Positions 36,499-50,373 of a stretch of 64,000 bases of DNA are shown piece by piece (position 1 is the first letter of the stretch; every line of letters starts with the position of its first letter). The stretch lies in the IMG/VR virus record IMGVR_UViG_3300003877_000001, positions 248,001 through 312,000 of that record; one strand, written 5' to 3'. Both the position numbers and the translations under genes were made by a program. The notes under the pieces were generated by a model. The model did not search any database. It was not told the origin of the DNA and saw nothing but the letters and a program-made list of their open reading frames with translations.

Positions 36499-36584
36499 AT
36501 TTTATAATTTTTTATAATTTATTATAAATACGATGAAAATTTTAAAAATCACAATTTTTATCAAAAATAAATGATTTATTTTAA

Positions 36585-37078: not shown

Positions 37079-37930
37079 TTAATTTAAACCTTGTACCATA
37101 ATATCACCATACTTAATACCATCATAACCCATCTGTTTTGCTTTTTCAGCAACAGCACGATTAATAATACTATCAGTACTTACATTATGATTTTTTGAAA
37201 TTTTATTAAAATCAATATTAGGAAACCAACTATTCGCTAATACTGAAACAGGATTAATATCACTTTTAAATGTTAAATCTAAATCATTTGTATTGAGAAT
37301 ATTATCAAATTCCATTTCATATTTATTATATCCATCAACAGGTTTTAATGAAAAGAAGTTTCCAACCTTTGAAATTTCACTAATTTCATCTCTTCTATAA
37401 CCTGTTATTTTCTTTGGTTTTTTACCAGATGTTTCATCGTGTAAAATTTCTTTATCATCATCTTCTAATTCACCTTCTAATGTTGTTAAAAAATCACCAC
37501 CATCAGTACCTTCAGAATCAATATCATTCATTCCGTTAATTTGATCTTGTGCAACTACTTCCATTACACTTTCTTGATTTTCATATTCAAAAATGTCCTG
37601 TATTTTATTTAATAATCTTATGGCATCTTTTTGCGATAACATTATTTGAAGTGCTTTAATTGGGACTGCACGACTTAATGCAGCAACATATCTATGATGC
37701 CCATCTAACACTTTCATTTCTTTTGATATCCAAATAGGTTGAACATTATCCATATCTATTTGAGATACTTTATCTTGTGCTACTATTCCTTGTGATGGTA
37801 TTAATTCATCTGGATCAATTTGAAGATACTTATAATCAACACCTTCCTTATCTAACATATTTAATGTATAATTAAAAGGAGCGTTCACTTGGGGTAACCA
37901 CATTGGTTTATAACGTAGGTCTATACTCAT
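37079..37930 (-). CDS. ParB/Srx-like domain protein with C-terminal ART-PolyVal-like segment
   Basis: LIPSQ...PIWIS...VLDGHHRYVAAL; C-terminal GNFFS...AKQMGYDGIKY. Confidence 0.65.
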   Translation of the reverse strand: MSIDLRYKPMWLPQVNAPFNYTLNMLDKEGVDYKYLQIDPDELIPSQGIVAQDKVSQIDMDNVQPIWISKEMKVLDGHHRYVAALSRAVPIKALQIMLSQKDAIRLLNKIQDIFEYENQESVMEVVAQDQINGMNDIDSEGTDGGDFLTTLEGELEDDDKEILHDETSGKKPKKITGYRRDEISEISKVGNFFSLKPVDGYNKYEMEFDNILNTNDLDLTFKSDINPVSVLANSWFPNIDFNKISKNHNVSTDSIINRAVAEKAKQMGYDGIKYGDIMVQGLN

Positions 37931-38852
37931 TTTCTAATTTATTTTCTAATATTTTTTCAATGCTATTATATTCATAATATGGAATTCTAATTAAATGAAT
38001 ATTATTTTTTATTGAAAATTCGTTTTTTAATTTATCATTTATTTGTCTTTCTTTAAATCCCTTAAAACCCCCAAATATTTTTACTACTTCAAAATGTTGT
38101 TTACCATCATATTCAATTAAAATATTTCTATTGGGTAAATAAAAATCAAACAATAAATTTGATTTATTTATACAACCGTCAAATTTTTTTTGACCATTAA
38201 ATACAATACCTCTTTTTACTAAATACTCTCTAATTCGTTTTTCACCTTTAGATTCCCTACATGTTGGACATCCTTGACCAGATAAATGTGAATTTGGTGT
38301 TTGTTTAAATATTCCATGTTTTAAACAAATAATTTCAACTTTTGTCATATAATTATAATATGACGAATTATCGTAATTATATTTATCACCATGTACTTCC
38401 TTTGCTTTTTTAATGAATTCTTCTTTTGTTAATGAAAACTTATCACTTAAAATATCTTTACCACATTTTAAACAACCATGTCTCATATGATTATTAGGTG
38501 TTTGTTTAAACATTCCATGTTCTAAACATATTATATTAACTTTCGTATTTGAGTTGATGTATTCAACTAAGGTATAATCATATTTATCACCATGTACTTC
38601 CTTTCCTTTTTTAATAAATTCTTCTTTTGTTAATGAAAATTTTTTTGATAAAATTTCGTTTCTACATTTAGAACAATTACTTCCTGTGTAATGATTCTTA
38701 GGATAAACACTAAATAATCCATGTTCTGGACATATAATATCAATCTTAGTACTAATATTAATATATCTAACTAAAGAATAGTCATATCTATTACCATGTA
38801 TTTTTTTTGATTTTTCTATAAACTTTTCATTAGTAAGTCTTTTCACTATCAT
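37908..38852 (-). CDS. Putative homing endonuclease: three Zn-binding repeats plus PD-(D/E)XK nuclease
   Basis: Three FIxKxKxxHGDKYDY...IICxxHGxF...CxxC repeats; FDFYLP...LIEYDGKQHF...LIRIPY. Confidence 0.85.
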   Translation of the reverse strand: MIVKRLTNEKFIEKSKKIHGNRYDYSLVRYINISTKIDIICPEHGLFSVYPKNHYTGSNCSKCRNEILSKKFSLTKEEFIKKGKEVHGDKYDYTLVEYINSNTKVNIICLEHGMFKQTPNNHMRHGCLKCGKDILSDKFSLTKEEFIKKAKEVHGDKYNYDNSSYYNYMTKVEIICLKHGIFKQTPNSHLSGQGCPTCRESKGEKRIREYLVKRGIVFNGQKKFDGCINKSNLLFDFYLPNRNILIEYDGKQHFEVVKIFGGFKGFKERQINDKLKNEFSIKNNIHLIRIPYYEYNSIEKILENKLENEYRPTL

Positions 38853-38904
38853 AAATACTCACTAATTGTTTTTTATTTAAACACTTTTGATTATATCTCA
38901 TAAA

Positions 38905-39762
38905 TTATCCAGTACTATCAATAAAATTGATATCTTTAATGGAAATTTTTTCAGGTGATTTATATGATTTGCTTCTTGCTCTATGAGTATAAACGAAGAA
39001 TCCATTTTTATCCGCACCTAAACTAACCCCATCAATTTTTTGTGTTTTATTTTTTAATTCTTCTGATTTAATTAATCCATGAAGATAACCACCTTCCTTA
39101 TATTTACTACCAGATGAAATATATGGTAATATCTTTTCTTTCATTTCTTTTGAAATTGATTTTGAACGTTTTAATGATTCTTTTGGGTTTACTTTAGATT
39201 CATTAATTAATATTTTCAACTCTTCAGAAATTATTTTATTTAACTTATTATTAGATTCTACTAATGCAAAACTACCATCAGTAACACGATAAACATTAAT
39301 CTGATATAGGTCACCTAGTTCTTCTTTCATTTTTGCGAAAACTACCATTTCCTTTTCTCTATCATCATAAACATTTATCGTATCTACATCTGGATATCGA
39401 TTAAGATATTGTCTTATTCGATCATCTTTCTCACCCCCACCTTGTTTTAAAGATAATTCATCAAACACAATATTGTGTGATTGTAATATCTTTTCTATTT
39501 CAGGTTGTAGTTTTTTTAGTCGTGAAGTGAGCATAATTGTTTTGGTGTCACTCTTAGTCGTATCACTTCTAAATTGGTTTAAAACACTTGGGATTGGGTT
39601 TATCTTAAATACTTTCATATTTAAGCTGTCAGGTCTACCCCACCATCCAACATGTGGATAATCTTTACCTGTTTTTGTTTTCCATAATTTCTTACCTTCA
39701 TCAGGCATTGGTGTATCCATAAGAGTACCATCAAAATCATAAAAGGATAATGTTGTTATCAT
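38905..39762 (-). CDS. HAD-family phosphatase, Swiss Army Knife RNA-repair-like, with extra C-terminal module
   Basis: YDFDGTLMDTP, GWW, MLTSR, VYDDR; second module after IISEELKILINE. Confidence 0.8.
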   Translation of the reverse strand: MITTLSFYDFDGTLMDTPMPDEGKKLWKTKTGKDYPHVGWWGRPDSLNMKVFKINPIPSVLNQFRSDTTKSDTKTIMLTSRLKKLQPEIEKILQSHNIVFDELSLKQGGGEKDDRIRQYLNRYPDVDTINVYDDREKEMVVFAKMKEELGDLYQINVYRVTDGSFALVESNNKLNKIISEELKILINESKVNPKESLKRSKSISKEMKEKILPYISSGSKYKEGGYLHGLIKSEELKNKTQKIDGVSLGADKNGFFVYTHRARSKSYKSPEKISIKDINFIDSTG

Positions 39763-39772
39763 AATTCTTTAT

Positions 39773-40153
39773 TTAAAGGTAACCAACTTCTGCAACTTTT
39801 CCACTTAATTCGATTGCGAATTGAATTGGTTTCCAATTAGTTATTTTATTTGACATAAAAGGTTTTCCACCTTCTTTTCTATTAACAGCTATTGTTATGT
39901 GTGGTATTACATTATCAGTAGGTACAATGGTTTCTACCATAGCTGCCATTGCTAAATCAGACATACCTATCTTAACAACTCTTAGTTGTGCTGTCATACC
40001 TAAATATTTTTCATATTCTTCTTTAATTTCACCCATGTTAAGTGTCATATGGTGTGCCACATTTTCCCAACCTTCAGGAATTTCAGAATATTGTAATAGC
40101 TTTGTTCTAGATGGTTCATCTAAAACCAATGCAGTATATGAAACCTTACCCAT
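39773..40153 (-). CDS. 2H phosphoesterase (tRNA-ligase cyclic phosphodiesterase-like)
   Basis: Two HxT motifs, HHMTL and PHITIAV, plus KPFMSNKI. Confidence 0.85.
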   Translation of the reverse strand: MGKVSYTALVLDEPSRTKLLQYSEIPEGWENVAHHMTLNMGEIKEEYEKYLGMTAQLRVVKIGMSDLAMAAMVETIVPTDNVIPHITIAVNRKEGGKPFMSNKITNWKPIQFAIELSGKVAEVGYL

Positions 40154-41262
40154 TATTTTATTTCGTTATATTTAACAATTCGTACTCTTTCGTTACCAAC
40201 AACATCAATTACCTTAATTTTTAATTCTTGGTCTGTAATATCAATGAAAAATGGTTTTGTATATTCTTTAAATTTATCAACATTATTTAGTTGAACCATT
40301 ATTTTACTTACACCTGATTTATTATCTATTGCAGTTAATGTTATTTTTCTCAAATTTGTTAATTCGTTTTTTATGATTTCTTCATTAACAAAAATTTCTG
40401 GTGGTATTGCATCTAAATAAAATTCAAATATATTTTCATTTTCTTTATTATTAATCCAATCATTAGAAAAATACCACAATATATGTTCACCATCATTTAG
40501 TTTATTTAATTTTATCGGTTCAATATATTTTATAAATTCTGTACTATCAAAATTATAATATGTTGAATTTACACCAACACCATCAATATCTTCACTAATT
40601 AAATTTATCACATCATTAGGTGATAGTAATATATTAACATCCCCTATATATGTTTTTGGTGGTGAATTGTCAATCCCAAAATTAAAATTATTATTATCAT
40701 AGTCATACGATAATTCACTAATTTTTTCTACATTACCAACATTATCAACACTATAAAACTTTAAATCAATATCAATACCAGCCTCAAATATAATAAAATT
40801 TTCATATAATGTAAAGTTTTTTCCATTAATTGAGTAATAAATTTTATCAACACCAGATAATTCATCTTCTCCAACTAATTCAATTTTTAAATCATCACCA
40901 TAATATCTTTTACCTCTAAAAACATATGTTTCTTTAGAAATAAAATTTACCTTTGTTTTTGGTGCTTTACTATCTGCATATATTTTCCATATTTGTTCTC
41001 CAAATGGATAAACATATTTACCTGTTGAATCCATTTCCCATTTAGTTCTTAAATAGTTTATTCCTTCGGTATCTAAATAAAAGGGTTTTTTTAACATTAC
41101 ACCATCTAAATTTGGTGATGATAATGTAATATATATGGGGAGTTTTTTATTCCAAAATATCTTTTCCCCATCAACATATGATTTTTCTATTTCTGTATGT
41201 TGTATTTGTGCTAAACCTATATTAGATAATAGTAAAAATATAATAAATAATATATATTTCAT
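40153..41262 (-). CDS. Secreted protein with repeated Ig-like (OmpL47-type) domains
   Basis: Signal peptide ending GLA-Q; repeated DxxPPxT, SGVxKIxY and DxVGNxE motifs. Confidence 0.7.
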   Translation of the reverse strand: MKYILFIIFLLLSNIGLAQIQHTEIEKSYVDGEKIFWNKKLPIYITLSSPNLDGVMLKKPFYLDTEGINYLRTKWEMDSTGKYVYPFGEQIWKIYADSKAPKTKVNFISKETYVFRGKRYYGDDLKIELVGEDELSGVDKIYYSINGKNFTLYENFIIFEAGIDIDLKFYSVDNVGNVEKISELSYDYDNNNFNFGIDNSPPKTYIGDVNILLSPNDVINLISEDIDGVGVNSTYYNFDSTEFIKYIEPIKLNKLNDGEHILWYFSNDWINNKENENIFEFYLDAIPPEIFVNEEIIKNELTNLRKITLTAIDNKSGVSKIMVQLNNVDKFKEYTKPFFIDITDQELKIKVIDVVGNERVRIVKYNEIK

Positions 41263-41939
41263 TAATTAAACTCTTTTTTTATTTTCTTTTTTATTTGCTC
41301 CAATTCTTTTTTTAATCTTGGATTTAAATTTTTTCCACCTTTGATTACTGTTATTGAATCAAGTCTTGGCTGTCCAATTATAACTTCACCGTTTTCTCTT
41401 ACATATATAGAAATAAGATTATATTTATCTAATCTAGTAATGTAATTACCTGCTGGTAAATTTTCAAAAGTTGATGCTTCTATTGGTACTTTTACTTCTG
41501 GAACTGAAGTTTTGTCTTTTTTTACTATTTCATCACTTTCGCCTGATAATTTTCGTATTCTATCCAATTCTTTTTTTATACGATCAATTTCCGAAAGTAA
41601 CTTTTTTTTTAGTTTATCGTTTTCTTTTTTTTTATATTCATAAGCAAGACTTTCCATCTTATCTGCTCTTTCATCTAATGAATCTAATTTAGATATTAAA
41701 GATAATTTTGTTAATAATATTTTATCTAAAATACTATTAACATTTTCCTTATTTTCATCAAAATCAATATTTAAATCTCTTGCTAATTGAATTATTGAAT
41801 CTTCCTTTGTTAAAATACCACTAGAAAATTCAACATTTCTATCCTCATTAACCACTTCTGGTGATTTATCACAAGATATTAGTATAATAAGAAGACTATT
41901 TACTAAGAAGTATTTCCAGAACTTTATCAACTCTTTCAT
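41262..41939 (-). CDS. Putative lipoprotein with coiled coil
   Basis: Lipobox-like LLIILISC. Confidence 0.6.
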   Translation of the reverse strand: MKELIKFWKYFLVNSLLIILISCDKSPEVVNEDRNVEFSSGILTKEDSIIQLARDLNIDFDENKENVNSILDKILLTKLSLISKLDSLDERADKMESLAYEYKKKENDKLKKKLLSEIDRIKKELDRIRKLSGESDEIVKKDKTSVPEVKVPIEASTFENLPAGNYITRLDKYNLISIYVRENGEVIIGQPRLDSITVIKGGKNLNPRLKKELEQIKKKIKKEFN

Positions 41940-42213
41940 TAGTTTTATCTATTTTATCATTTAATTTAGTATTGGCATCTTGAATATTTTCTAATTGTTG
42001 TAAAAGCAACTCATAGTTTACCCCTTCAAGATTTTTAACCCTTCCATTTAGTTCAGCATAATTTTTATCATGTTCATCATGACGATAATTACTAACCATG
42101 TAATTACCAATACCAGTTCCTATAACAGCAACAATAAGTATTACATTATACCAATTTCCAATCTTATTGAACATACCTTTTACACCGCTATTTATCTTTT
42201 CTGTCATTATCAA
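41896..42213 (-). CDS. Small single-TM coiled-coil protein
   Basis: TM VILIVAVIGTGIG followed by a heptad-like segment. Confidence 0.6.
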   Translation of the reverse strand: MIMTEKINSGVKGMFNKIGNWYNVILIVAVIGTGIGNYMVSNYRHDEHDKNYAELNGRVKNLEGVNYELLLQQLENIQDANTKLNDKIDKTNERVDKVLEILLSK

Positions 42214-42255
42214 ATATTTAATTAAGAATAATATTATATTCTAATATAAATACCT

Positions 42256-44040
42256 TTATGATTTAGGATTATTCAATAAATTAAGTAAATCTTCTCTATT
42301 ATTTTTTATTTTATCACCATAAACATTTATTAATGCTGACCTAAGACCATCACCAATTTCTTTACCTTTAAGACCCATCTCCATTAAATCATTACCATTA
42401 ACAGCTAACTCTCCAATTGATTTAGGGTATAAACCCGAATCTAAATCTACAATACCTCTTTTCAATTTTTCTGGAAGAATTTGACTATTAAGTGATTCTG
42501 GTGATTTAGTAAACATGTTATGTGCAACTACACGATTTTTTACATTATCATTACTTACATTAGTGAATCCATTTGATAAGGCTTCAATCTCTTTAACTGT
42601 TGGTATATCACCTTTCAATGTTTTTCTAAATACTTCTGCTGGATTATCTAATTGTCTTGTTAATAAGTAAATAAATTCACCCATTGTATTTACTTTATTA
42701 AATGGACTTTCATCAATAATTGATTGATCTAAATCAACACCAAACATATTTTGAAATAATCCAGTATTTTTTAATAATTGTGCTCCAACCTTTTTATCAC
42801 CCTTAGTTACAATTTTTTCTAATTCAATAAACATTCTTTCACCTGCAATTTCTTTAATCTTAGGTGCGTTTTGTTTAATTAAATCCATTGTATGTGGTTC
42901 GATTGTGAAACCAAACCTAGATGCGAATTGAACACCTCTAAGCATTCTAAGAGGATCATCAGCAAATGCTTCTGGATTAACAACTCTAATAATTTTATTT
43001 CTTAAATCATCCTGACCGTTATATGGGTCAATTAAATTACCGTTAACATCTTTTGCAATTGCATTAATTGTAAAATCTCTTCTTTTTAAATCATCTTCAA
43101 TAGGTAATTCGTGATCTGATTTTACATCAAATCCTTTATGTCCATCACCAACCTTTTGTTCTGTTCTAGGAATTGCAATATCAATATCATCGGTTGCACC
43201 TTTAGGTACAAACTTAATAACACCAAATGACTTACCTACTGCATCTACTTTACCGTATTTAGTTAATAGTCTTTCTAGTTTATCCATAGGTATTCCAGTA
43301 ATAAGAATATCTAAATCTTTAGAATCTTTTCCTAAAAATTTATCTCTTACTGCACCACCTACTGAAAATATTTTACCACCAAGTTTTTCAATTTCTTGTT
43401 TGAATGGTAAATCTTCTAAAGACATTATATTTGCTTCTTTAATCATATTTTTCTTATACGTACTATTCGACTCTTGGGTTACACTATTTACTTGTTCCCA
43501 TATACATCTATGAAACTTATCATAATCCATGTTACTTAATTTAAGTGTAGGATTAACCTTTATTGTTAAATTCATATTTAAAGGTTTATTAAGTATTTTT
43601 GCTGCATAATATCTATGATGTCCATCTTGGATATAAAACCCTTCACTCCAACCATTAGGTTTATCATAATCAACTTCAATTGGTTCTGACAAATCAACAG
43701 ATTGTGCATATTCGATATCTGATAAACCCTTTTGTTCTATTTCCCATTTAACATTTTCCAAATCATTTCTCCATCTAACCTTTAATTCATTTGGCATTAT
43801 GGTATTTTTTTCTTGAGTGAATCCAAATGCCCATTGATCAAATAAATCATCAGGTAATCCACCGCTTCTTAATAAATCTTCATCACTCTTAAATTTTTTT
43901 AAATAGTTTGATACGTAATCAGGTATTTCAAGTTTTTCACATTCATTATTTTCTTCATTTATAGTATTTTCATATAAACTACTTCCTGAATCAGTTACAT
44001 CTTCTCTTGTATGATTAGCAGGATATGTATTTTTTACCAT
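42256..44040 (-). CDS. cca: Class II tRNA nucleotidyltransferase (CCA-adding) fused to an N-terminal ParB-like domain
   Basis: VGGAVRD, KDLDI, EDDLKRRDFTINA, DDPLRMLR, ERMFIEL, LAVNGNDL; N-terminal IQDGHHRYYAA. Confidence 0.88.
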   Translation of the reverse strand: MVKNTYPANHTREDVTDSGSSLYENTINEENNECEKLEIPDYVSNYLKKFKSDEDLLRSGGLPDDLFDQWAFGFTQEKNTIMPNELKVRWRNDLENVKWEIEQKGLSDIEYAQSVDLSEPIEVDYDKPNGWSEGFYIQDGHHRYYAAKILNKPLNMNLTIKVNPTLKLSNMDYDKFHRCIWEQVNSVTQESNSTYKKNMIKEANIMSLEDLPFKQEIEKLGGKIFSVGGAVRDKFLGKDSKDLDILITGIPMDKLERLLTKYGKVDAVGKSFGVIKFVPKGATDDIDIAIPRTEQKVGDGHKGFDVKSDHELPIEDDLKRRDFTINAIAKDVNGNLIDPYNGQDDLRNKIIRVVNPEAFADDPLRMLRGVQFASRFGFTIEPHTMDLIKQNAPKIKEIAGERMFIELEKIVTKGDKKVGAQLLKNTGLFQNMFGVDLDQSIIDESPFNKVNTMGEFIYLLTRQLDNPAEVFRKTLKGDIPTVKEIEALSNGFTNVSNDNVKNRVVAHNMFTKSPESLNSQILPEKLKRGIVDLDSGLYPKSIGELAVNGNDLMEMGLKGKEIGDGLRSALINVYGDKIKNNREDLLNLLNNPKS

Positions 44041-46636
44041 TTTGATCTATTATATTAAGACCTGCTTCTTGTGCTACTTTTAATACCGTATTAGTATTAT
44101 GATCTTCAGCAATTTCTTTTAATCGTTGTTTAGTTATAATCTCTTCATTAATAATATTTTTAATTAAGAATATTGATTCATCTAACATTTTATGTCTATC
44201 ATTTACTGCTTTTTCAAAAGTATCTTCTAACCATTTCCAAGCAGATTTTTTATCTGCATCAGTAATTTTAATATCTTTTTCATCAATACCTACATCATTT
44301 ATTGATTCATCTTGCCATGCAAAATATTTATATTTACCAGAATCACTTTCACCTTCAGTATATTTATTTCCAGCTTCTACTGGTGGAATCATTACATATT
44401 TATGATTCCAAGCTAAATTACCTTTAATATCCCAAGGATATTCAGGTTCTTTTTTTGCTTCTTTTTCTTTATCAGATAATTTCAACCCATAATCATGTGT
44501 TATTTCAACTTTAAAATACATAACGGGATATTCCCAATCACCACCAGCTTCCCATAGTTCAGCATTAATTTCATATTTTATTGGTTGGTTTTTACGTAAA
44601 TCTTTATTAAAGTAAAAAGTTTTCTTTTGTTTAGTACTATCATTATTTTCTAAATCAAAATTAACTTTATAGAATTCTTGACCTTGTTTTATTGGATCAC
44701 TCCATGCATCATTTATTATACTACTATAATCAAAAATTTCATCCTTTTCTTTTCTATTAATTATAGATTCAGTTAAATCATTTATTGTTTCGTTAATTTT
44801 TCTATCTATGTCTTGAAAATAATGTCTTTCTTTAACATCATCTTCAGCTACATTTGTAGTGTTTGCTTTTCTACGATGTTGATTATCATCATTAATATCT
44901 GTTAATACAACATTATTTATGTCTCCTTGATTACATGCTTTTGATGTTCCATTACCATTTCCACCTAATTGACATTCTTTTTTTATTGTAACTGCTTTAG
45001 ATTTTGGCATCCAACTTGTTATTCTTTCGGTAATTATATTTGCAGTAATATCTAAAAACATTTCATTTAAATCCCAAATATCATCTTCTGCATTAACAGT
45101 ACCTTGTGCATTAGTATATAATGAAGTCCCATCTTCATTTATACCTTGTCCACCTAACTTATATTTATCAGATTCTGAATCTGCACTACCATCAACACCC
45201 CAATATACTAAATCTTCCTTAATTAAGCCAACCCTTTTAAAGAATTTTTGAATCTTCATTAAATTATTAAAAAATTTAACATTATTATTAGATATTTTTA
45301 ATGAGTTTTCAATATTTTGTGAACCAATTAAATAATTTTTCAATAATTTAGAAACCATTTCGCCTGTTGGTTTATAAATATTACCATGTGCTTCTATAAA
45401 ATCGGTTGATTGTTTTAAATCCTCTGAAGAAATATCTCTATAATCTTCATATGCATATTCATTTAAGTCATCACCAACCAATTCATTAGATGATGTGAAT
45501 GCATTACCACCATACCCACCATCTTTTATATTAGCATCTTCAGCAGCATTATCTAAAAAATCTTGCATTTGAAATTGTACTTCATTAATACTATCTTCTT
45601 TATTTTCAATCCCTTCTCTTTGTCTACTTTTATTATAATATGTATTATAAACATCATGAGATAAACCATAATCAATTACAACAATCTGAGGTTGACCATC
45701 CCTATTAACCTCACCGTATGATGATATTCTATCTAAATCACCAGCACTTTGAGCAAAATTAGCAATCATTTCACCTAAACTAGAGGTAAACTCATTTTCC
45801 CACATATCTTCTTCAATGGATTTATCTAATTCAGCACCATAATATTGACCACGACCATTTGCCTTATGATCATATAGTTTTAGAAATGCACCAACATCTT
45901 CAACACGATAACCCGTTAATTCTTTAAATCTGTTTTTACCTACTTTTTTTGCTCTTTCAGATTCAATCCATAAATCATTTGGATGACTATCAATAACTTT
46001 AGTAATTACATCATCATTCCATCCTTGTGTTGATACTGAAGTTTCTTCGGCATTTTGTGCTAAACCCTTTTGATTAGCTGCTAGTTTTAATGCCATTTTA
46101 TCATCAACAGCATATACGTGTCTACCACTTCCACTTGCAATTTTTTCTAAGTGTTCATCAGCATATCTTTTTCTAGCAGCAAATGATGTTAAACCTTTAA
46201 ATTCGTCCATATTAAATGATACTGGATAATCTTCTTCTAAATTATCTTCATTCATAGTCCAAATTTCTCTACGAATTATTTCATCTAAATTTTCATCTAT
46301 TTCTTTTTTTGGTTCTCTAAACATAAGTTCCATTGTTTCATAATCTTTGTTTCTGCCTTTATTCATGATAAAACCTAGACTTTTATACCAATTAATTAGT
46401 TTATTTTTATTAGCACCAAAATCACTAGAAGGTGTTAACGCTAATATTTTACCTCTTTCGTTAGCATAATTTATTATTTGCTCCATAGTTTCTTGAGCAT
46501 AACCACTACCTCTAAAATCAGGGTTTATTCTGATTTGATTTAACACAAGAAATTTACCTCTATCTGTTAAATAGAATTTCCCAACTTCTTGTCCATTAAA
46601 AAATATTGTTTCTGAATTAAAATCTAGATTTACCAT
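44015..46636 (-). CDS. Multidomain protein: GNAT acetyltransferase, protein-kinase-like domain and unknown modules
   Basis: INPDFRGSGYA...WYKSLGF (GNAT); SGSGRHVY...ALKLA...QNAEE...GDL...IDYGL (kinase fold). Confidence 0.75.
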   Translation of the reverse strand: MVNLDFNSETIFFNGQEVGKFYLTDRGKFLVLNQIRINPDFRGSGYAQETMEQIINYANERGKILALTPSSDFGANKNKLINWYKSLGFIMNKGRNKDYETMELMFREPKKEIDENLDEIIRREIWTMNEDNLEEDYPVSFNMDEFKGLTSFAARKRYADEHLEKIASGSGRHVYAVDDKMALKLAANQKGLAQNAEETSVSTQGWNDDVITKVIDSHPNDLWIESERAKKVGKNRFKELTGYRVEDVGAFLKLYDHKANGRGQYYGAELDKSIEEDMWENEFTSSLGEMIANFAQSAGDLDRISSYGEVNRDGQPQIVVIDYGLSHDVYNTYYNKSRQREGIENKEDSINEVQFQMQDFLDNAAEDANIKDGGYGGNAFTSSNELVGDDLNEYAYEDYRDISSEDLKQSTDFIEAHGNIYKPTGEMVSKLLKNYLIGSQNIENSLKISNNNVKFFNNLMKIQKFFKRVGLIKEDLVYWGVDGSADSESDKYKLGGQGINEDGTSLYTNAQGTVNAEDDIWDLNEMFLDITANIITERITSWMPKSKAVTIKKECQLGGNGNGTSKACNQGDINNVVLTDINDDNQHRRKANTTNVAEDDVKERHYFQDIDRKINETINDLTESIINRKEKDEIFDYSSIINDAWSDPIKQGQEFYKVNFDLENNDSTKQKKTFYFNKDLRKNQPIKYEINAELWEAGGDWEYPVMYFKVEITHDYGLKLSDKEKEAKKEPEYPWDIKGNLAWNHKYVMIPPVEAGNKYTEGESDSGKYKYFAWQDESINDVGIDEKDIKITDADKKSAWKWLEDTFEKAVNDRHKMLDESIFLIKNIINEEIITKQRLKEIAEDHNTNTVLKVAQEAGLNIIDQNGKKYISC

Positions 46637-46644
46637 AGTAATAT

Positions 46645-46673
46645 AAAAAACCCATAGCAGTAACTATGGGTTT
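46645..46673 (-). terminator. Intrinsic terminator
   Basis: aaacccatag/ctatgggttt perfect 10-bp stem plus U-tract. Confidence 0.75.
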
Positions 46674-46693
46674 ATTCTGCTTTCATATAAATA

Positions 46694-47443
46694 CTATTGT
46701 TTTTTTGATTTATTAATTTTTTGTAAATCGATAATTGTTTCACGTACAATTTGTTCAATTACTGTACGATTTTCCTCTAATGCCTCTTTAATTACTTCTG
46801 CTTTATATGATTCAATGATTGAATTTTTCATTGCTTCAGCAAATAAATGTCCAAAATTTTCATTTAATAATTGTGTTGCAACATTATTAACTTGTTCGAT
46901 AATTAATTGTGGTGGTGCACCAACAGCCATTTGATTTTGCATCATTTGCTGTTCATTTAAGATTCCACCTTGATTTCCCATAGGTGTTCCTACATGTCCC
47001 ATTTGTTGATATTGTGATATTGCATCAGCAACACCAACAGTTGAAGTAGGTTGTCCCATTGGTTTGTTATAATTAGTATTAGATTGTTCTCTAATTCTTT
47101 TAGCCTCATTCATTCTTGCAACTTCAGCAGCAGAAGGAATATGCCCATTTGTTTGTTGTGGTTGAATACTTTGTGTTGGTGCACTTGAAGTAACATGTTC
47201 CAATATTGAAGGGTCTACCGTTTTACCTGCTAATTTCGCTTCAGCTACTTGATTTACTGTTTTTACTTTAACACTAGCACCTGTTTGTTCACCTGTTTGT
47301 CTTGTATGTACCAATTCTCTTAAAAATTGATCACCACTTACTGGAATGATTGTACTTTCACCTAGTGCTGTTTTTCTAACATTTTGTTCCTGCTTTGTCT
47401 TATCTATTGTTTCTCTTAGTTTTTCTAAGTCTAATTTTGACAT
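46694..47443 (-). CDS. Hypothetical Gln-rich protein
   Basis: 249-aa ORF; GTATTTATA upstream. Confidence 0.7.
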   Translation of the reverse strand: MSKLDLEKLRETIDKTKQEQNVRKTALGESTIIPVSGDQFLRELVHTRQTGEQTGASVKVKTVNQVAEAKLAGKTVDPSILEHVTSSAPTQSIQPQQTNGHIPSAAEVARMNEAKRIREQSNTNYNKPMGQPTSTVGVADAISQYQQMGHVGTPMGNQGGILNEQQMMQNQMAVGAPPQLIIEQVNNVATQLLNENFGHLFAEAMKNSIIESYKAEVIKEALEENRTVIEQIVRETIIDLQKINKSKKQ

Positions 47444-47500
47444 ATTCTATTTTTATAAAATTTTATTATTTTTTATAAATACTACAAAAAAGAAAAAAAT

Positions 47501-48409
47501 TTAACTATTTTGTAAATTTCTTTCAAATTCTACCTTTTGTTTATTAAAAAAGGTTTTATCTATTGGTTTACTACGTTCACCACCTAGTAATGAACCAGAA
47601 TTATTTAATTTATTTTGAAAATTTTCAAATGCACTTTGAGAAACCCTTTTGGTATCTTTAAGTCCTGCTACTTCTTTAAATAAATCATCTAAATTACCTA
47701 CAATACTTTGAGAATCAAGCCTTACTTCCCAATTTTTAGTTTTATATTCTAATTGTCCATTAGGTTTTTGAACTACAATATAGTTTGCAGGGTTTTGTTT
47801 TCTACTAAATTTAACCCTACCAAACAAATTTGTAAGTTCCTTTTTAAATTGAAAATCATTGGTATCATTAACAAAACTCTTTAAACTAGCAGCTTGATTA
47901 TCAAATACCGAACCTTCTCTTGATTGGAAATTTGGTTCTTCTATTGAATCTTGTCCTTTCATATTATCTTGAGGGATTTCTTCATCAGTATATGCTGCAA
48001 TTACGTTCAATGCACTATCATTAGGATTAAAATTAGGTCTTGGTGTTACTGCATTTTTAAATTTTTCATTTGTTGGCATAAATGATGATATACCTTCAAC
48101 ATTAAATAATCTCCAACCACCTTTATTTAAACCACCGCTATTCCATTTATCTGGTCTAGTACGTTTAGTATCACTAGCACCTGCTTGTTGATACGATCTC
48201 AGCAATAAATTTCCTGTTGTTTTATGTGTTCCTAAGACATACGGTTCAATTGTACGATATCCACGATTAGTTGTATTATCACCTTGATAATATATATACA
48301 TAACGTCTTTACCTTCAATAGCATCTACAATTGATTTTTGATCAACAGATTCTGTTAAAAGTCTAAGATTTTTAATATTATCCTTTATAAGGTGATTTTC
48401 ATTTAACAT
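47501..48409 (-). CDS. WYL-like domain protein
   Basis: IYYQG...RTIEPYVLG...LLRSYQ...WRLFNVEGIS pattern. Confidence 0.7.
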   Translation of the reverse strand: MLNENHLIKDNIKNLRLLTESVDQKSIVDAIEGKDVMYIYYQGDNTTNRGYRTIEPYVLGTHKTTGNLLLRSYQQAGASDTKRTRPDKWNSGGLNKGGWRLFNVEGISSFMPTNEKFKNAVTPRPNFNPNDSALNVIAAYTDEEIPQDNMKGQDSIEEPNFQSREGSVFDNQAASLKSFVNDTNDFQFKKELTNLFGRVKFSRKQNPANYIVVQKPNGQLEYKTKNWEVRLDSQSIVGNLDDLFKEVAGLKDTKRVSQSAFENFQNKLNNSGSLLGGERSKPIDKTFFNKQKVEFERNLQNS

Positions 48410-48413
48410 GATT

Positions 48414-48650
48414 TTATGCTTTTGTTATATCATATGGGTCATTTTGAGTGAATTGGTTTTTTGCTTCCAATTGTTTTCTCTTTTTGATATCTGTTGCACT
48501 ACCAATTGTTTCAGTTTCACCTTTACCATGTTCATCACCATCAGATAAAGCATTTTCATGTCCAACATTATATTCATCATTGTTTGTAAACTCATTTTTT
48601 GCTAACAATGGATTTCTATATTGTGGTGAATTTTCTAATAATCTACTCAT
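48414..48650 (-). CDS. Small acidic protein with internal duplication
   Basis: LLAKNEFTNNDEY / LEAKNQFTQNDPY. Confidence 0.65.
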   Translation of the reverse strand: MSRLLENSPQYRNPLLAKNEFTNNDEYNVGHENALSDGDEHGKGETETIGSATDIKKRKQLEAKNQFTQNDPYDITKA

Positions 48651-48699
48651 TTCTCTTTATTTATTTTTAAATGTTATTTCTTATAAATACTTTTAAGTT

Positions 48700-48951
48700 T
48701 TAAATATGTTTCCATCTTTCTTTATCTACAATTGTAGATGATGATAGGTCTGATTCTAATATTCCATAAATAAACGAAGATTCACCATATTTATTATATG
48801 ATCTTTGTAGAAGATTATTATAATGTTTACCTCTTCTTAATTCTGCAAAATGTTTGTTGATTCTTTTATAAATATTTAAAGAACTACCAACATATATTTT
48901 TTTATTAACATTATTTTTAATTAAATAAACACCAGAAAATTTTCTATTCAT
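48700..48951 (-). pseudogene. Truncated GIY-YIG homing endonuclease (catalytic domain only)
   Basis: SGVYLIKN...IYVGSS...R...H; stops at 83 aa; homologous to the N-terminus of 59227..60081. Confidence 0.7.
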
Positions 48952-49813
48952 ACTTTGTTAGTGCAATTTTAACATAATCCATAAGATTAGGTACTGTATC
49001 TAATTTATCTATTTCATCAATTGAATACCAACCATAATCTTGATGTTCATCATTCAATTCAACATCATCATTATCACCATCATATTTTGCAATAAACATA
49101 TGTTCCACACTGTCTTCATTTCTTTGTAAAACAAACTTCTCAATAAACTTATTAATATCAAGACCTGTCTCTTCTTTTATTTCTCTTTGAACCGCTTCTA
49201 CTGGTTCTTCACCTTCTTCGACACCACCACCAACTAATGCTATTTTTTCAGGCATCCATTGCTCTTTATAAGACGATCTCTGTAAGAGTAGTACTTCCAT
49301 ATCATTATTAAAAATAATCGCTAGAGCGTTCTTTGTGAGGTTATTATCAATTTCTTCACCTTCTAATATTTCACCTTCAGGAATTTTTTTTCTTCCAATT
49401 CTATCCAACCAACCTTCATGATTATGTAAAAGTCTTTGTTCTGATTCTCTTAAATTAACTTCACCATTTTGTGCAGTTAAATCTAATGAATTAGCCATAA
49501 CCATTGTTGGTTTTTTTATTTCTTTTGATTTAGCAGTTCTATCTCTTTCATTTCCTAATTGTTGATCGATAAACATTTTCATTTCATTACCACCTGCATA
49601 ATCAAGTTCATCTTTAGATGTTGTTTGTGCATTGAAATTATCGAAAAAGTTTTTTAACCTTTTCATTTGCTCATACGATATATTACCGCTATTAACAAGA
49701 CCCTTTGCTCTTTTTATTCCATTACCTGTTGGGCTAGTATATATTTTAGCATTAATCTTATTTAAAATTTCTTTTGGTATTGGATATGTATTACCATATA
49801 ACTCCGAATTCAT
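48944..49813 (-). CDS. Nudix hydrolase fused to an N-terminal phage domain
   Basis: Nudix box GGVEEGEEPVEAVQREIKEETGL; LNDEH...W. Confidence 0.88.
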   Translation of the reverse strand: MNSELYGNTYPIPKEILNKINAKIYTSPTGNGIKRAKGLVNSGNISYEQMKRLKNFFDNFNAQTTSKDELDYAGGNEMKMFIDQQLGNERDRTAKSKEIKKPTMVMANSLDLTAQNGEVNLRESEQRLLHNHEGWLDRIGRKKIPEGEILEGEEIDNNLTKNALAIIFNNDMEVLLLQRSSYKEQWMPEKIALVGGGVEEGEEPVEAVQREIKEETGLDINKFIEKFVLQRNEDSVEHMFIAKYDGDNDDVELNDEHQDYGWYSIDEIDKLDTVPNLMDYVKIALTKYE

Positions 49814-49814
49814 A

Positions 49815-50324
49815 TTATTTCTTTCTTTTTCCCTCCAATAGGTTAATTAATTTATCTAATTCTGCTTTAGGTAATTTACCTAATAAATCAGCAACTTTAT
49901 CTACATTACCACCAACTAAATCTTTATTTTTTTTTTCTGGTGGAATTAATTTATCTTCCTTTTTAGGTGATATTTTATCTTCAACTACTTTACCCTCATT
50001 TATTGAACCATCTCCTTCAAATGCTTCTTCTAGGAATGGCTTAATGGTTTCCATAACAGCATTTGCTTTATCACCAACAACACCTTCTAATGCCTCAACA
50101 ACAGCAGGTTTATCAGAACTATCAGACTCATAAAAATAAAACCCAAAACGACCTAAAAAATCATTTTTAAAATTCTGACCATGAACTTTTGCATTATAAT
50201 CAGTTGTTTTAGTTGCTTGTGTTTCGTTATCTGGTGATGATTCAGGTCTATCTACACTACCAATAATATTACTTTCACTATCGATAATTTCTTGTATTTT
50301 ATCTTTTGTTATTTTCATATTCAA
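49815..50324 (-). CDS. Hypothetical protein
   Basis: About 167-169 aa, likely start MKITK at 50318; GTATTTATA upstream. Confidence 0.7.
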   Translation of the reverse strand: MNMKITKDKIQEIIDSESNIIGSVDRPESSPDNETQATKTTDYNAKVHGQNFKNDFLGRFGFYFYESDSSDKPAVVEALEGVVGDKANAVMETIKPFLEEAFEGDGSINEGKVVEDKISPKKEDKLIPPEKKNKDLVGGNVDKVADLLGKLPKAELDKLINLLEGKRKK

Positions 50325-50346
50325 ATACTTTTATATAAATACTAAG

Positions 50347-50373
50347 AAAAGGGGAATTATTATAAATCCCCTT
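50347..50373 (-). terminator. Intrinsic terminator overlapping the polymerase stop
   Basis: aagggga.../...tcccctt stem plus U-tract. Confidence 0.55.

What the first reader, a model, noticed from the sequence alone, without database searches (positions are those of the whole stretch)
37079..50324. Modular enzymes separated by (I/L)xE linkers: possible protease-processed, head-packaged cargo
Seen: unrelated domains are joined by acidic linkers rich in INE/LNE/LTE/IKE. Examples: GNAT-DENLDEIIRREIWTMNEDNLEE-kinase-SINE; ParB-NMIKE-CCA enzyme; HAD-IISEELKILINE-extra module; RLLTE-WYL; VNLRE...ILE-Nudix. Many of these genes follow the GTATTTATA motif. Established: T4 prohead protease gp21 cleaves after (I/L)-x-E and matures internal proteins that are injected with the DNA. 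Inference: these are polyproteins cut in the prohead, delivering acetyltransferase, kinase, tRNA-repair and nucleotide-hydrolase activities at the start of infection, possibly against host defences.
Basis: partly seen in the sequence, partly recalled or inferred. Interest (0 to 1): 0.68.

Follow-up and report, generated by a model that had tools for sequence, protein, structure and literature searches.

The report
Protease-cut cargo proteins in a giant phage
A giant T4-like phage carries a conserved block of late genes for multi-enzyme proteins whose parts are joined by conserved sites matching the phage's own head protease, so they are probably cut apart inside the head and injected with the DNA; cleavage and packaging remain untested.

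Summary
The window lies in a 326-kb, 27% GC T4-superfamily phage that encodes a gp21-type prohead protease. Its capsid propeptide and scaffold-like protein carry [IL]xE sites. ParB-CCA, HAD, WYL and Nudix are not enriched. Comparison with about 25 syntenic relatives shows the real signal. Hydrophobic-x-E sits at 125 of 144 de-replicated module junctions (73.5 expected), while hydrophobic-x-D is at chance. It is also conserved at N-terminal peptides and inter-domain linkers of the neighbouring proteins. In relatives the same domains (kinase-like, GNAT, ART-PolyVal, CCA, 2H) are fused into single 1,959-2,693-aa polyproteins of the 'polyvalent protein' kind. The 249-aa family carries almost four times the expected [IL]xE (394 against 102). 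The block is driven by GTATTTATA, a motif shared with portal, scaffold-like, terminase and baseplate genes but absent before the polymerase, helicase and SbcCD-like genes. Best reading (about 0.5): late-made, prohead-protease-processed, head-packaged cargo. No data here show cleavage or packaging.

The parts
50352..50371 (-). Terminator-like hairpin just after the PolB stop codon; it separates the polymerase unit from the block
50334..50342 (-). GTATTTATA promoter-like motif before the 169-aa gene. Further copies lie at 48682-48690, 47474-47482, 46686-46694 and 42245-42253, and at 36523-36531 just outside the region.
   Evidence: the same motif precedes scaffold-like, portal, terminase, baseplate and tail-fibre-like genes
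49815..50324 (-). 169-aa protein of unknown fold (likely ATG at 50318). Its N-terminal decapeptide MKITKDKIQE (50289-50318) ends in [IL]xE.
   Evidence: M-K-x-K-K-K-[DE]-[LI]-x-E is conserved in 20 of 20 homologues
48944..49813 (-). N-terminal domain, linker and Nudix hydrolase (Nudix 48998-49333); conserved L-R-E in the linker at 49445-49453
   Evidence: Pfam NUDIX E 4e-21; the linker [LI]xE is kept in 20 of 20 homologues although linker length and sequence vary
48700..48951 (-). 83-aa GIY-YIG homing-endonuclease fragment, an insertion that is not part of the system
   Evidence: homologues in only 3 loci
48414..48650 (-). 78-aa conserved small protein; its N-terminal LLE is not conserved
47501..48409 (-). 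302-aa WYL-fold protein with a 20-residue N-terminal peptide ending L-T-E (48350-48409)
   Evidence: E4 and E20 are invariant with a hydrophobic residue at -2 in 20 of 20; residues 1-20 have pLDDT below 50 and lie outside the fold; WYL fold
46694..47443 (-). 249-aa Q/N-rich, mostly disordered protein with 11 [IL]xE; candidate multiply-cut substrate with a motif density like that of the scaffold-like protein
   Evidence: z 5. Family: 169 vs 54.5 expected in 18 members and 394 vs 102 in 40 more, with control motifs flat. Site positions are conserved. It lies directly upstream of the polyprotein in 23 loci.
46648..46673 (-). 11-bp hairpin plus T run between the 249-aa gene and the 873-aa gene, downstream of the 46686 motif
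   Evidence: similar hairpins in relatives
46319..46618 (-). 873-aa protein, residues 7-106: GNAT of the polyvalent-protein type
   Evidence: Pfam; 45-47% identical to a domain in DarB-like and PLxRFG giant proteins; GNAT fold
46235..46318 (-). 873-aa protein, residues 107-134: conserved REIW helix flanked by IDE, LDE, MNE and LEE
   Evidence: REIW[TS][LM][DN]E in 11 of 11 sequences that carry the REIW helix; E130 invariant; pLDDT below 50
45605..46234 (-). 873-aa protein, residues 135-344: kinase-like module (APH/protein-kinase fold)
   Evidence: pLDDT above 90; Foldseek APH(2''), MTR kinase, ULK1; phrog_4301
45206..45604 (-). 873-aa protein, residues 345-477: linker with INE (350-352) and LNE (391-393), then a helical module (396-477)
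44843..45205 (-). 873-aa protein, residues 478-598: linker with INE|DGTSLY (499-501), LNE and ITE|RITSWMPK (535-537), then a small Cys-containing module ending N-VAE (596-598)
   Evidence: E501 and E537 invariant; [ILMF]xE|RI.S[WY]MPK in 9 of 9; N[VI]AE in 11 of 11
44015..44842 (-). 873-aa protein, residues 599-873: alpha/beta module ending KM-LDE|S (818-820), then a helical tail
42256..44040 (-). ParB/Srx-like N-domain (DGHHRY) joined through M-IKE (43435-43443) to a CCA-adding enzyme; its start overlaps the 873-aa ORF by 26 nt in another frame
   Evidence: Pfam PolyA_pol E 2e-24; PHROG ParB-like; the same [IM]xE|..IMSL..LPF junction precedes CCA in two other fusion contexts; overlap
40153..42213 (-). 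Three genes for membrane or secreted proteins (105, 225 and 369 aa) with no homologue in related loci. This insertion separates CCA from the 2H/CPD domain, which are one ORF in relatives.
39773..40153 (-). 126-aa 2H/CPD phosphoesterase. In the fully resolved giant ORFs of relatives (L013, L077) it is the C-terminal domain, preceded by LDE or LNE.
   Evidence: Pfam tRNA_lig_CPD
38905..39762 (-). HAD phosphatase (Swiss-Army-Knife RNA-repair type) ending L-V-E (39256-39264), then IISEE...INE (39199-39207), then an extra C-terminal module
   Evidence: Pfam HAD_SAK_1; [LI]xE at the end of HAD is conserved; most relatives stop there and lack the extra module
37908..38852 (-). HNH homing endonuclease, an insertion
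   Evidence: phrog_559 E 7e-77
37079..37930 (-). 283-aa ParB/Srx-like protein (DGHHRY at 37688-37705). An acidic linker is bounded by conserved V-M-E (37559-37567) and I-S-E (37376-37384).
   Evidence: phrog_2859; conserved positions E124 and E185

Best explanation
Window 37079-50342 is one conserved module of a clade of T4-superfamily jumbo phages, apparently transcribed late. The gene order is: 169-aa protein, Nudix, 78-aa protein, WYL protein, 249-aa protein, a polyprotein (GNAT, kinase-like and three unknown modules; then ParB-CCA; then 2H/CPD), HAD, and a ParB-like protein.

The multi-domain members are polyvalent proteins in the sense of Iyer et al. 2017. Here the polyprotein has been split into three genes by a frame change and a three-gene insertion.

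Inferred mechanism:
1. The proteins are made late, from the promoter type that also drives the virion genes.
2. They enter the prohead.
3. The phage's gp21-type protease cuts them after Glu in hydrophobic-x-E sites. These sites lie at every module junction and after short N-terminal peptides.
4. The released enzymes (acetyltransferase, kinase-like, CCA-adding, 2H and HAD phosphoesterases, Nudix, ParB-like, WYL) are injected with the DNA and act before any phage gene is expressed. A plausible role is to mend or pre-empt host attack on tRNA and to destroy nucleotide signals.
5. The 249-aa protein is a multiply-cut substrate with a motif density like that of the scaffold-like protein, perhaps a loading or filler protein for this cargo.

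Shown: motif placement and conservation, the protease gene, the same motif in the phage's head proteins, the shared promoter motif, and the domain fusions in relatives.
Inferred: entry into the prohead, cleavage, injection, and the targets.
For: Protease and its specificity.
- Peptidase_S77 is present.
- The capsid propeptide and the scaffold-like protein are enriched in [IL]xE only, not in [IL]xD, [IL]E or [IL]xxE.
- A capsid maturation site [ILM]xE|[SA] is conserved in 6 relatives.
- All 9 of 9 near-complete genomes that carry the kinase-like module encode S77.

Junctions.
- BLAST breakpoints of the 873-aa protein fall at about 110-120, 336-351, 494-502, 516-535, 613-621 and 821. Each coincides with a site.
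- Among 44 homologous multi-domain proteins of at least 500 aa, 32 yielded 185 insertion boundaries. 161 have hydrophobic-x-E nearby against 99 expected (z 8.9).
- After de-replication the count is 125 of 144 against 73.5 (z 8.8). Hydrophobic-x-D gives z 0.6, x-N -0.2 and x-K -2.7.
- E130, E501 and E537 are invariant.

Fusions. Relatives carry the same domains in single ORFs of 1,959-2,693 aa, some with ART-PolyVal, SAM lyase or Acb1-like 2H domains.

The 249-aa family. [IL]xE is 169 against 54.5 expected, then 394 against 102 (mean z 4.1 and 5.2; minimum 2.05 in the second set), at conserved positions in disordered Q/N-rich sequence.

Neighbouring families. 19 of 43 conserved Glu columns have a conserved hydrophobic residue at -2, against 7 of 39 in the PolB and glycosyltransferase controls. 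The conserved N-terminal peptides end in [IL]xE in 20 of 20 for the 169-aa and WYL families. The WYL peptide lies outside the fold.

Timing.
- GTATTTATA precedes the scaffold-like, portal, large terminase, gp25-like baseplate and tail-fibre-like genes.
- It is absent before PolB, the helicase and the SbcCD-like genes.
- A terminator-like hairpin separates PolB from the block.
- The motif is conserved before the 249-aa gene in 16 of 17 relatives.

Precedent. T4 gp21 cuts after L/I-x-E. It cuts core proteins many times and trims the injected proteins Alt and IPI-III (PMC9026906). Polyvalent proteins are predicted to be injected and processed into units (PMC5512222).
Against: - There are no proteomic or expression data. 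Everything rests on sequence.
- Raw motif density is at composition level for ParB-CCA, HAD, WYL and Nudix.
- In the AlphaFold model of the 873-aa protein only 7 of 19 [IL]xE lie in segments with pLDDT below 50, and those segments are 32% of the length.
- E-x-hydrophobic is also enriched at junctions (z 4.3), so part of the signal may be general linker chemistry.
- A conserved N-terminal IKE also occurs in PolB, which is unlikely to be cargo.
- An N-terminal [IL]xE is common in this proteome anyway: 16% observed against 15% expected.
- No N-terminal sequence is shared between these proteins as the T4 capsid-targeting sequence is shared among the internal proteins.
- The block sits next to the polymerase, not in the head module.
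- The stand-alone kinase-like homologue in phage XacN1 lies among non-structural genes.
- Three relatives have an HExxH motif inside the polyprotein, which would allow self-processing.
- The late assignment of GTATTTATA rests on about ten annotated genes.
Confidence: 0.5

Rival explanations
1. The junction sites are cut, but in the cytoplasm late in infection, by the prohead protease or another Glu-specific protease. The polyprotein is a way to make several enzymes in equal amounts. Nothing is packaged or injected.
For: T4 gp21 expressed alone cleaves a cytosolic host protein at an I/LxE loop (PMC12991175). The block lies beside replication genes. RNA-repair enzymes would also be useful inside the producing cell. 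Two Rnl-type RNA ligases are encoded elsewhere in the genome.
Against: Repair enzymes made only late would miss most of the infection. The GNAT domain's closest cultured relatives lie in giant proteins encoded among late tail-fibre and lysis genes. The 249-aa protein, with a motif density like the scaffold-like protein's, has no obvious cytoplasmic role.
Confidence: 0.15
2. The proteins are not cut at all. They work as intact multi-domain enzymes. Hydrophobic-x-E at the junctions reflects linker or helix-cap structure, or conserved linker cassettes that allow modules to be shuffled by recombination.
For: The conserved junction motifs are longer than three residues (E-DGTSLYT..QGTV, E-RITSWMPK), as expected for structural elements or recombination cassettes. 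In P0012 the same linker motif flanks inserted modules on both sides. E-x-hydrophobic is also enriched. Overall density is modest in the polyproteins (mean z 1.5).
Against: The effect is specific to Glu: Asp, Asn and Lys at the same spacing show nothing. It matches the specificity seen in this phage's own capsid and scaffold-like proteins. It recurs in unrelated neighbouring families and in short N-terminal peptides. It reaches about four-fold excess in a disordered protein where no fold constrains it.
Confidence: 0.25
3. Processing is autocatalytic, by an embedded zincin-like metallopeptidase, as proposed for classical polyvalent proteins.
For: HExxH motifs occur inside the polyproteins of three relatives (P0006/L009, L013, L063). 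This is the published model (PMC5512222).
Against: No HExxH occurs in any protein of this window's block. Pfam finds no peptidase in four giant relatives. The conserved P1 Glu fits a gp21-type serine protease.
Confidence: 0.05
4. It is a compositional accident of an AT-rich genome rich in I, L, N, K and E.
For: Genome-wide [IL]xE is only 1.13 times expectation. Most region proteins are not enriched. N-terminal motifs occur at the chance rate.
Against: Shuffles keep composition and still give z 5 for the 249-aa protein and z 8.8 for junction placement. The positions are conserved at 30-50% identity.
Confidence: 0.03

Closest known systems
T4 prohead core and injected proteins (gp22, gp67, gp68, IPI-III, Alt) processed by gp21
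   Same: A gp21-family protease is present. Cleavage logic is hydrophobic-x-Glu. One protein carries many sites, like the scaffold. Enzymes carry short N-terminal peptides ending in the motif. One enzyme class (GNAT here, ADP-ribosyltransferase in Alt) could modify host proteins on entry.
   Different: T4 cargo proteins are single-domain and are only trimmed at their ends. Here the sites lie between unrelated enzyme modules of polyproteins up to 2,693 aa in relatives. No shared capsid-targeting sequence is visible. The cargo would be RNA-repair and nucleotide-hydrolysing enzymes. Nothing is shown experimentally.
Polyvalent proteins of phages and conjugative elements (Iyer, Burroughs, Anand, de Souza, Aravind 2017; PMC5512222)
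   Same: Many unrelated catalytic domains sit in one polypeptide with rampant shuffling. The domain repertoire is shared: GNAT, divergent kinase, ART-PolyVal, 2H, ParB-like. [quoted passage not shown] The proposed role is delivery with the DNA and processing into units.
   Different: The published model uses an embedded metallopeptidase, and this window has none. It uses sites for the capsid maturation protease instead. In this phage the polyprotein is broken into separate genes. The locus is beside the DNA polymerase rather than among structural genes.
Ejection and inner-body proteins of phiKZ, 201phi2-1 and SPN3US cut by their prohead protease
   Same: These are giant phages in which many head-internal proteins are cleaved after Glu by a gp21 homologue and then enter the cell (PMC9026906, PMC7411985).
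   Different: They belong to a different phage lineage, and the published sequence logos differ from T4's L/I-x-E. The substrates are mostly proteins of unknown function and virion RNA-polymerase subunits, not fused repair enzymes.
Phage RNA-repair sets (T4 Pnk and Rnl; Swiss-Army-Knife RNA-repair proteins; CCA enzymes of jumbo phages, PMC7824862)
   Same: HAD_SAK_1 phosphatase, 2H/CPD phosphoesterase, CCA-adding enzyme and a kinase-like module are clustered.
   Different: No RNA ligase lies in the block; two Rnl-type genes are elsewhere in the genome. The kinase-like module has an APH/protein-kinase fold, not the P-loop fold of Pnk. The genes carry the virion-type promoter motif.

Membership tests
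Substrate of a T4-type (gp21, Peptidase_S77) prohead protease | The genome encodes a gp21-family protease | tested here: met
   PF03420, E 4e-21, 72.8 bits, genome 81026-81490; phrog_207 head maturation protease
Substrate of a T4-type (gp21, Peptidase_S77) prohead protease | L/I-x-E sites at accessible positions, beyond what chance gives | tested here: met
   Junction placement z 8.8 with flat Asp, Asn and Lys controls; conserved sites in disordered segments. Raw density is raised only in the 873-aa and 249-aa proteins.
Substrate of a T4-type (gp21, Peptidase_S77) prohead protease | This phage's protease really has L/I-x-E specificity | tested here: inconclusive
   Indirect only: the capsid propeptide site [ILM]xE|[SA] is conserved in 7 genomes and the scaffold-like protein is enriched. 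No cleavage data.
Substrate of a T4-type (gp21, Peptidase_S77) prohead protease | N-terminal capsid-targeting sequence | tested here: inconclusive
   Conserved N-terminal peptides of 10 and 20 residues end in [IL]xE in the 169-aa and WYL families. There is no similarity among the proteins. A comparison with the T4 capsid-targeting sequence was not run.
Substrate of a T4-type (gp21, Peptidase_S77) prohead protease | Protein found cleaved in proheads or virions | not testable with these tools
   The family is known only from metagenomes
Polyvalent protein (Iyer et al. 2017) | Two to fifteen unrelated domains in one polypeptide, with extensive shuffling | tested here: met
   The 873-aa protein has five or more modules. 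Relatives reach 1,959-2,693 aa with different orders and inserts.
Polyvalent protein (Iyer et al. 2017) | Domains belong to the polyvalent network | tested here: met
   PF18760 ART-PolyVal in P0003 and P0011, weakly in L013. The GNAT is 45-47% identical to a domain in DarB-like and PLxRFG proteins. It also matches phrog_10691, a 3,925-position profile.
Polyvalent protein (Iyer et al. 2017) | Embedded metallopeptidase (MPTase) | tested here: not met
   No HExxH in any protein of the block. The motif is present in three relatives but was not tested as a domain.
Polyvalent protein (Iyer et al. 2017) | Late or structural gene context and delivery with the DNA | tested here: inconclusive
   The promoter motif is shared with virion genes, but the locus adjoins PolB. 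Delivery cannot be tested.
RNA repair system of the T4 Pnk/Rnl or Swiss-Army-Knife type | End-healing enzymes (kinase, phosphatase, 2H) clustered with an RNA ligase | tested here: not met
   HAD_SAK_1, CPD and CCA are present. RNA_ligase hits lie only at genome 137 kb and 222 kb, and there is no RtcB. The kinase-like module has an APH fold.
WYL-domain protein | WYL (Sm/SH3-like) fold | tested here: met
   Foldseek hits to PafBC, CapW, BrxR and DriD, probability 1.0, rmsd 3-4 A over about 100 residues. There is no Pfam hit, so this is fold-level only.

The most novel reading that the evidence does not exclude
A clade of T4-like jumbo phages packs a ready-made repair and counter-defence kit into the capsid as polyproteins. 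The kit includes a CCA-adding enzyme, 2H and HAD phosphoesterases, a kinase-like enzyme, GNAT, Nudix, ParB-like and WYL proteins. The capsid maturation protease serves as the processing enzyme, with hydrophobic-x-Glu sites between modules replacing the embedded peptidase of classical polyvalent proteins. A dedicated, multiply-cut 249-aa partner protein loads or spaces the cargo. Alternatively, that protein could act as a protease sink that shields the phage from host sensors of protease activity.
Probability: 0.4. Interest if true: 0.8.

Novelty: new variant of a known kind. Interest (0 to 1): 0.66.

Why it matters
If true, it links two ideas that have so far been separate. One is the T4 route for loading and trimming injected proteins. 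The other is the computationally predicted 'polyvalent' effector proteins. The link would show that a capsid protease can act as a polyprotein-processing enzyme for cargo.

It would also mean that tRNA-repair activities can be delivered before any phage gene is expressed. That changes how one thinks about the timing of defence and counter-defence around anticodon nucleases and nucleotide signalling.

The idea is directly testable, because the predicted cut sites are exact. The short conserved N-terminal peptides and junction motifs could also become tools for loading foreign proteins into capsids of this clade, as the T4 targeting sequence has for T4.

Tried and rejected
- Reading the motif as TATAAATA(C), the T4 late promoter. 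The hits upstream of genes were reverse complements of divergently oriented GTATTTATA copies. The coding-strand motif is GTATTTATA.
- Raw density of [IL]xE as the test. It is uninformative for most proteins.
- Site enrichment in low-confidence segments of the AlphaFold model. The result is weak: 7 of 19 sites in 32% of the length.
- The 431-aa protein at 18404-19699 scored z 5, but only because a tandem repeat carries LIE/IIE. It is not relevant.
- A shared targeting peptide. REIW, DGTSLY, SWMPK and the other junction words occur nowhere else in the genome.
- N-terminal [IL]xE within 14 residues as a mark of cargo. It occurs at the chance rate: 69 of 423 proteins.
- Homology of the 249-aa family to the phage's scaffold-like protein or its 264-aa core-like protein. 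None was found (hhalign probability below 1%).
- A frameshift joining the 873-aa and ParB-CCA ORFs. The second frame opens only two codons before its ATG.
- Cultured relatives with virion proteomes. The 249-aa protein has no match in 50,697 phage records. The XacN1 and Atu_ph07 hits are single domains among unannotated genes.
- DarB-like and PLxRFG giant proteins as negative controls. Their [IL]xE z is 1.3-1.6, so overall density does not separate them from this clade's polyproteins (mean z 1.5). Only junction placement does.
- Sigma-70-type promoters are not enriched in the region: 96 against 113 in shuffles.
- Not used: read mapping, complex prediction, and the large representative-protein search. 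No claim here rested on them.

Full report
**Context.** The window is bases 248001-312000 of a single 325,854-bp virus contig with 27% G+C, which CheckV rates complete. It belongs to the T4 superfamily.
- It has a Peptidase_S77 (gp21-type) prohead protease at genome 80912-81619 and a gp23-type capsid protein at 77549-79201.
- A 507-aa acidic protein lies between them, where T4 has the scaffold gp22. It has no family match.
- Portal and large terminase genes are nearby.
- The nearest cultured capsid relatives are a Microcystis phage (33% identity over 96% of the protein) and Flavobacterium phages (43% identity over its C-terminal 43%).

**The genes of the finding.** All lie on the minus strand. 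In coding order:
- PolB (50360-54295), followed by a terminator-like hairpin
- a 169-aa protein
- an N-domain plus Nudix protein
- a GIY-YIG fragment
- a 78-aa protein
- a 302-aa protein
- a 249-aa Q/N-rich protein
- the 873-aa protein
- ParB-like plus CCA enzyme
- three membrane or secreted proteins
- a 126-aa 2H/CPD phosphoesterase
- a HAD_SAK_1 phosphatase with an extra module
- an HNH endonuclease
- a 283-aa ParB-like protein

An AlphaFold model of the 873-aa protein, built on 54 aligned relatives, resolves these parts:
- GNAT (residues 7-106)
- a very confident kinase-like domain (135-344)
- a helical module (396-477)
- a small Cys-containing module (545-598)
- an alpha/beta module (about 599-820)
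- long low-confidence linkers between them

Foldseek matches the kinase-like domain to aminoglycoside phosphotransferases, MTR kinase and protein kinases, and the GNAT to acetyltransferases. The 302-aa protein has a WYL fold at structure level only.

**Checking the observation.** Every quoted junction is present. Raw density does not support a general enrichment.
- Genome-wide [IL]xE is 1.13 times the composition expectation.
- The region has 72 sites against 57.4 expected (z 2.2).
- Only the 873-aa protein (19 vs 11, z 2.7) and the 249-aa protein (11 vs 3, z 5) stand out. ParB-CCA, HAD, WYL and Nudix do not.
- As a positive control, the scaffold-like protein has 23 sites (z 4.9) and the capsid protein z 2.7. 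Neither shows any excess of [IL]xD, [IL]E or [IL]xxE.
- The capsid N-terminus carries five sites, and M-INE|S lies where T4 gp23 is cut. That site is conserved as [ILM]xE|[SA] in six related genomes.

So the phage's protease very probably has T4-like specificity, which is L/I-x-E in T4 (PMC9026906).

**Comparative evidence for the polyprotein.**
- The word search found 23 relatives of the 873-aa protein, and a scan of viral contigs found 135.
- Their architectures are shuffled. The same modules are combined with CCA enzyme, 2H phosphoesterases, ART-PolyVal, SAM lyase and extra kinase-like domains. Single ORFs of 1,959-2,693 aa run from the kinase-like module through GNAT to CCA. In the two longest (L077, L013) they continue through 2H to a C-terminal CPD domain.
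- The homology breakpoints of the 873-aa protein all coincide with a hydrophobic-x-E.
- The junction words are conserved: REIW[TS][LM][DN]E (11/11); [ILMF]xE|RI.S[WY]MPK (9/9); N[VI]AE (11/11); [ILM]xE|[DG]G..LY (6/8); [IM]xE|..IMSL..LPF before CCA in three different fusion contexts; KMLDE|S (4/4).
- E130, E501 and E537 are invariant.

A systematic test used the 44 homologous multi-domain proteins of at least 500 aa. Every place where one protein has an insertion of 60 or more residues relative to another was taken as a boundary.
- 32 of the proteins yielded 185 boundaries. 161 have hydrophobic-x-E within the window, against 99 expected (z 8.9).
- After clustering similar windows the count is 125 of 144 against 73.5 (z 8.8).
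- Hydrophobic-x-D (z 0.6), x-N (-0.2) and x-K (-2.7) show nothing. The xx-E spacing is weak (2.2). E-x-hydrophobic is also raised (4.3).

The signal is therefore specific to Glu and largely specific to the spacing.

**Synteny and the neighbours.** About 25 loci share the order PolB, 169-aa, Nudix, 78-aa, WYL, 249-aa, polyprotein, HAD, ParB-like, 134-aa, glycosyltransferase. In this window the polyprotein is split in two ways. The 873-aa and ParB-CCA ORFs overlap by 26 nt in different frames, with no long frameshift overlap. CCA and CPD are separated by three genes that have no counterpart elsewhere.

The 249-aa family is the strongest result.
- At about 30% identity, 18 members carry 169 [IL]xE against 54.5 expected.
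- 40 further metagenomic members carry 394 against 102 (mean z 5.2, minimum 2.05).
- All control motifs are near zero.
- About a dozen site positions are conserved within otherwise variable Q/N/P-rich sequence.
- The family is not homologous to the phage's scaffold-like protein.

In the other families overall density is ordinary, but particular sites are conserved.
- 169-aa family: M-K-x-K-K-K-[DE]-[LI]-x-E at the N-terminus, 20 of 20.
- WYL family: E4 and E20, 20 of 20. Residues 1-20 lie outside the fold.
- Nudix: one [LI]xE in a linker of variable length, 20 of 20.
- HAD: a site at the end of the domain.
- ParB-like protein: sites at both ends of its acidic linker.
- Overall, 19 of 43 conserved Glu columns have a conserved hydrophobic residue at -2, against 7 of 39 in PolB plus glycosyltransferase.

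**Promoter.** GTATTTATA occurs 78 times in the genome. It is almost always in coding orientation, 3-61 nt before a start codon.
- Annotated genes behind it are the scaffold-like gene, portal, large terminase, a gp25-like baseplate wedge, a tail-fibre-like protein and homing endonucleases.
- PolB, the helicase and the SbcCD-like genes lack it. Several of these have TAnnTTTG instead, the Bacteroidota -7 element, which is enriched (41 against 21).
- The motif, with a long conserved leader, precedes the 249-aa gene in 16 of 17 relatives.

I read it as the late promoter, with moderate confidence. It is not a mark of these genes in particular.

**Interpretation.** The closest published concept is the polyvalent protein (PMC5512222): giant multi-domain effectors predicted to travel with the DNA and to be cut into units by an embedded metallopeptidase.
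- The domain set fits: GNAT, divergent kinase, ART-PolyVal, 2H, Pol-beta nucleotidyltransferase and ParB. [quoted passage not shown]
- The GNAT is 45-47% identical to a domain in the 3,764-aa DarB-like and 3,867-aa PLxRFG proteins, which are encoded among late genes of two podoviruses.
- What differs is that no peptidase motif exists in this block. Instead the junctions carry the recognition motif of the capsid protease, which all nine near-complete genomes with the family encode.

I put this at about 0.5. The main rivals are uncut multi-domain enzymes whose linkers happen to favour this motif (0.25) and cytoplasmic processing without packaging (0.15). The second is made plausible by the report that gp21 cuts a cytosolic I/LxE loop (PMC12991175).

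**Limits.** All evidence is sequence-based. The family is known only from metagenomes, so no virion proteome can be consulted. The boundary test depends on BLAST end points and on related sequences, although de-replication did not weaken it. The functions of three modules of the 873-aa protein and of the 169-aa, 78-aa and 249-aa proteins remain unknown.

Noticed in passing
window 1-1833 (ORF continues upstream to genome 246441; 1,130 aa, minus strand): A large protein with 19 [IL]xE against 9.5 expected (z 3.5), and no excess of [IL]xD. Its C-terminal 60 residues match several PHROGs of unknown function. It may be another protease-processed virion protein.
   Followed up: partly
window 18404-19699 (minus strand): A 431-aa protein made of about seven tandem copies of a unit of roughly 50 residues (…LIETSDNKYLIGGQFT.YNG..KNRI.RLNTDGS.DNSFN.GSGF…). 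It looks like a beta-propeller, and its high motif score is a repeat artefact.
   Followed up: no
window 40153-42213 (minus strand): Three genes have no homologue in any related locus. They encode a 105-aa membrane protein (weak Rz-like spanin hit), a 225-aa protein with a lipobox-like signal, and a 369-aa signal-peptide protein with an Ig-like hit. They are inserted, with their own GTATTTATA, between CCA and CPD, which are one ORF in relatives.
   Followed up: partly
window 46648-46694 (minus strand): The GTATTTATA copy overlapping the stop codon of the 249-aa gene is followed at once by an 11-bp hairpin and a T run, and only then by the 873-aa start codon. A subset of relatives has the same order (motif, hairpin, gene). 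This could be an attenuator that sets a high ratio of the 249-aa protein to the polyprotein.
   Followed up: partly
whole genome; for example window 14167-15681, 5177-6214 and 58432-59106 upstream regions: TAnnTTTG, the -7 element of Bacteroidota promoters, is enriched upstream of genes that lack GTATTTATA (41 against 21 in shuffles). This points to a Bacteroidota host and to an early/late split of promoters.
   Followed up: partly
window 54292-58398 and 50360-54295 (minus strand): The 1,368-aa ORF has PHROG hits to primase, helicase-loader and terminase families (P-loop ATPase type) at residues 137-523 and to DNA helicase at 1030-1347, with an unmatched middle. PolB is unusually long (1,311 aa). 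Either may hold an intein or an inserted domain.
   Followed up: no
window 37908-38852, 48700-48951, 59227-60081; genome 75826-77463 and 49570-51291: There are many homing endonucleases (HNH and GIY-YIG), one truncated to 83 aa. One sits just after the capsid gene. Three (genome 49570-51291, window 59227-60081 and L077) lie behind GTATTTATA or at the same spot as in relatives.
   Followed up: no
loci L009, L013, L063 (relatives): HExxH motifs lie inside three related polyproteins. They may be the metallopeptidase of classical polyvalent proteins, but they were not tested as a domain.
   Followed up: no
genome 88523-89317 (minus strand, beside the portal gene): A 264-aa acidic protein with 13 [IL]xE (4.9 per 100 residues) lies behind GTATTTATA. 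It is probably a prohead core protein of the gp67/gp68 kind, but it has no family match.
   Followed up: partly
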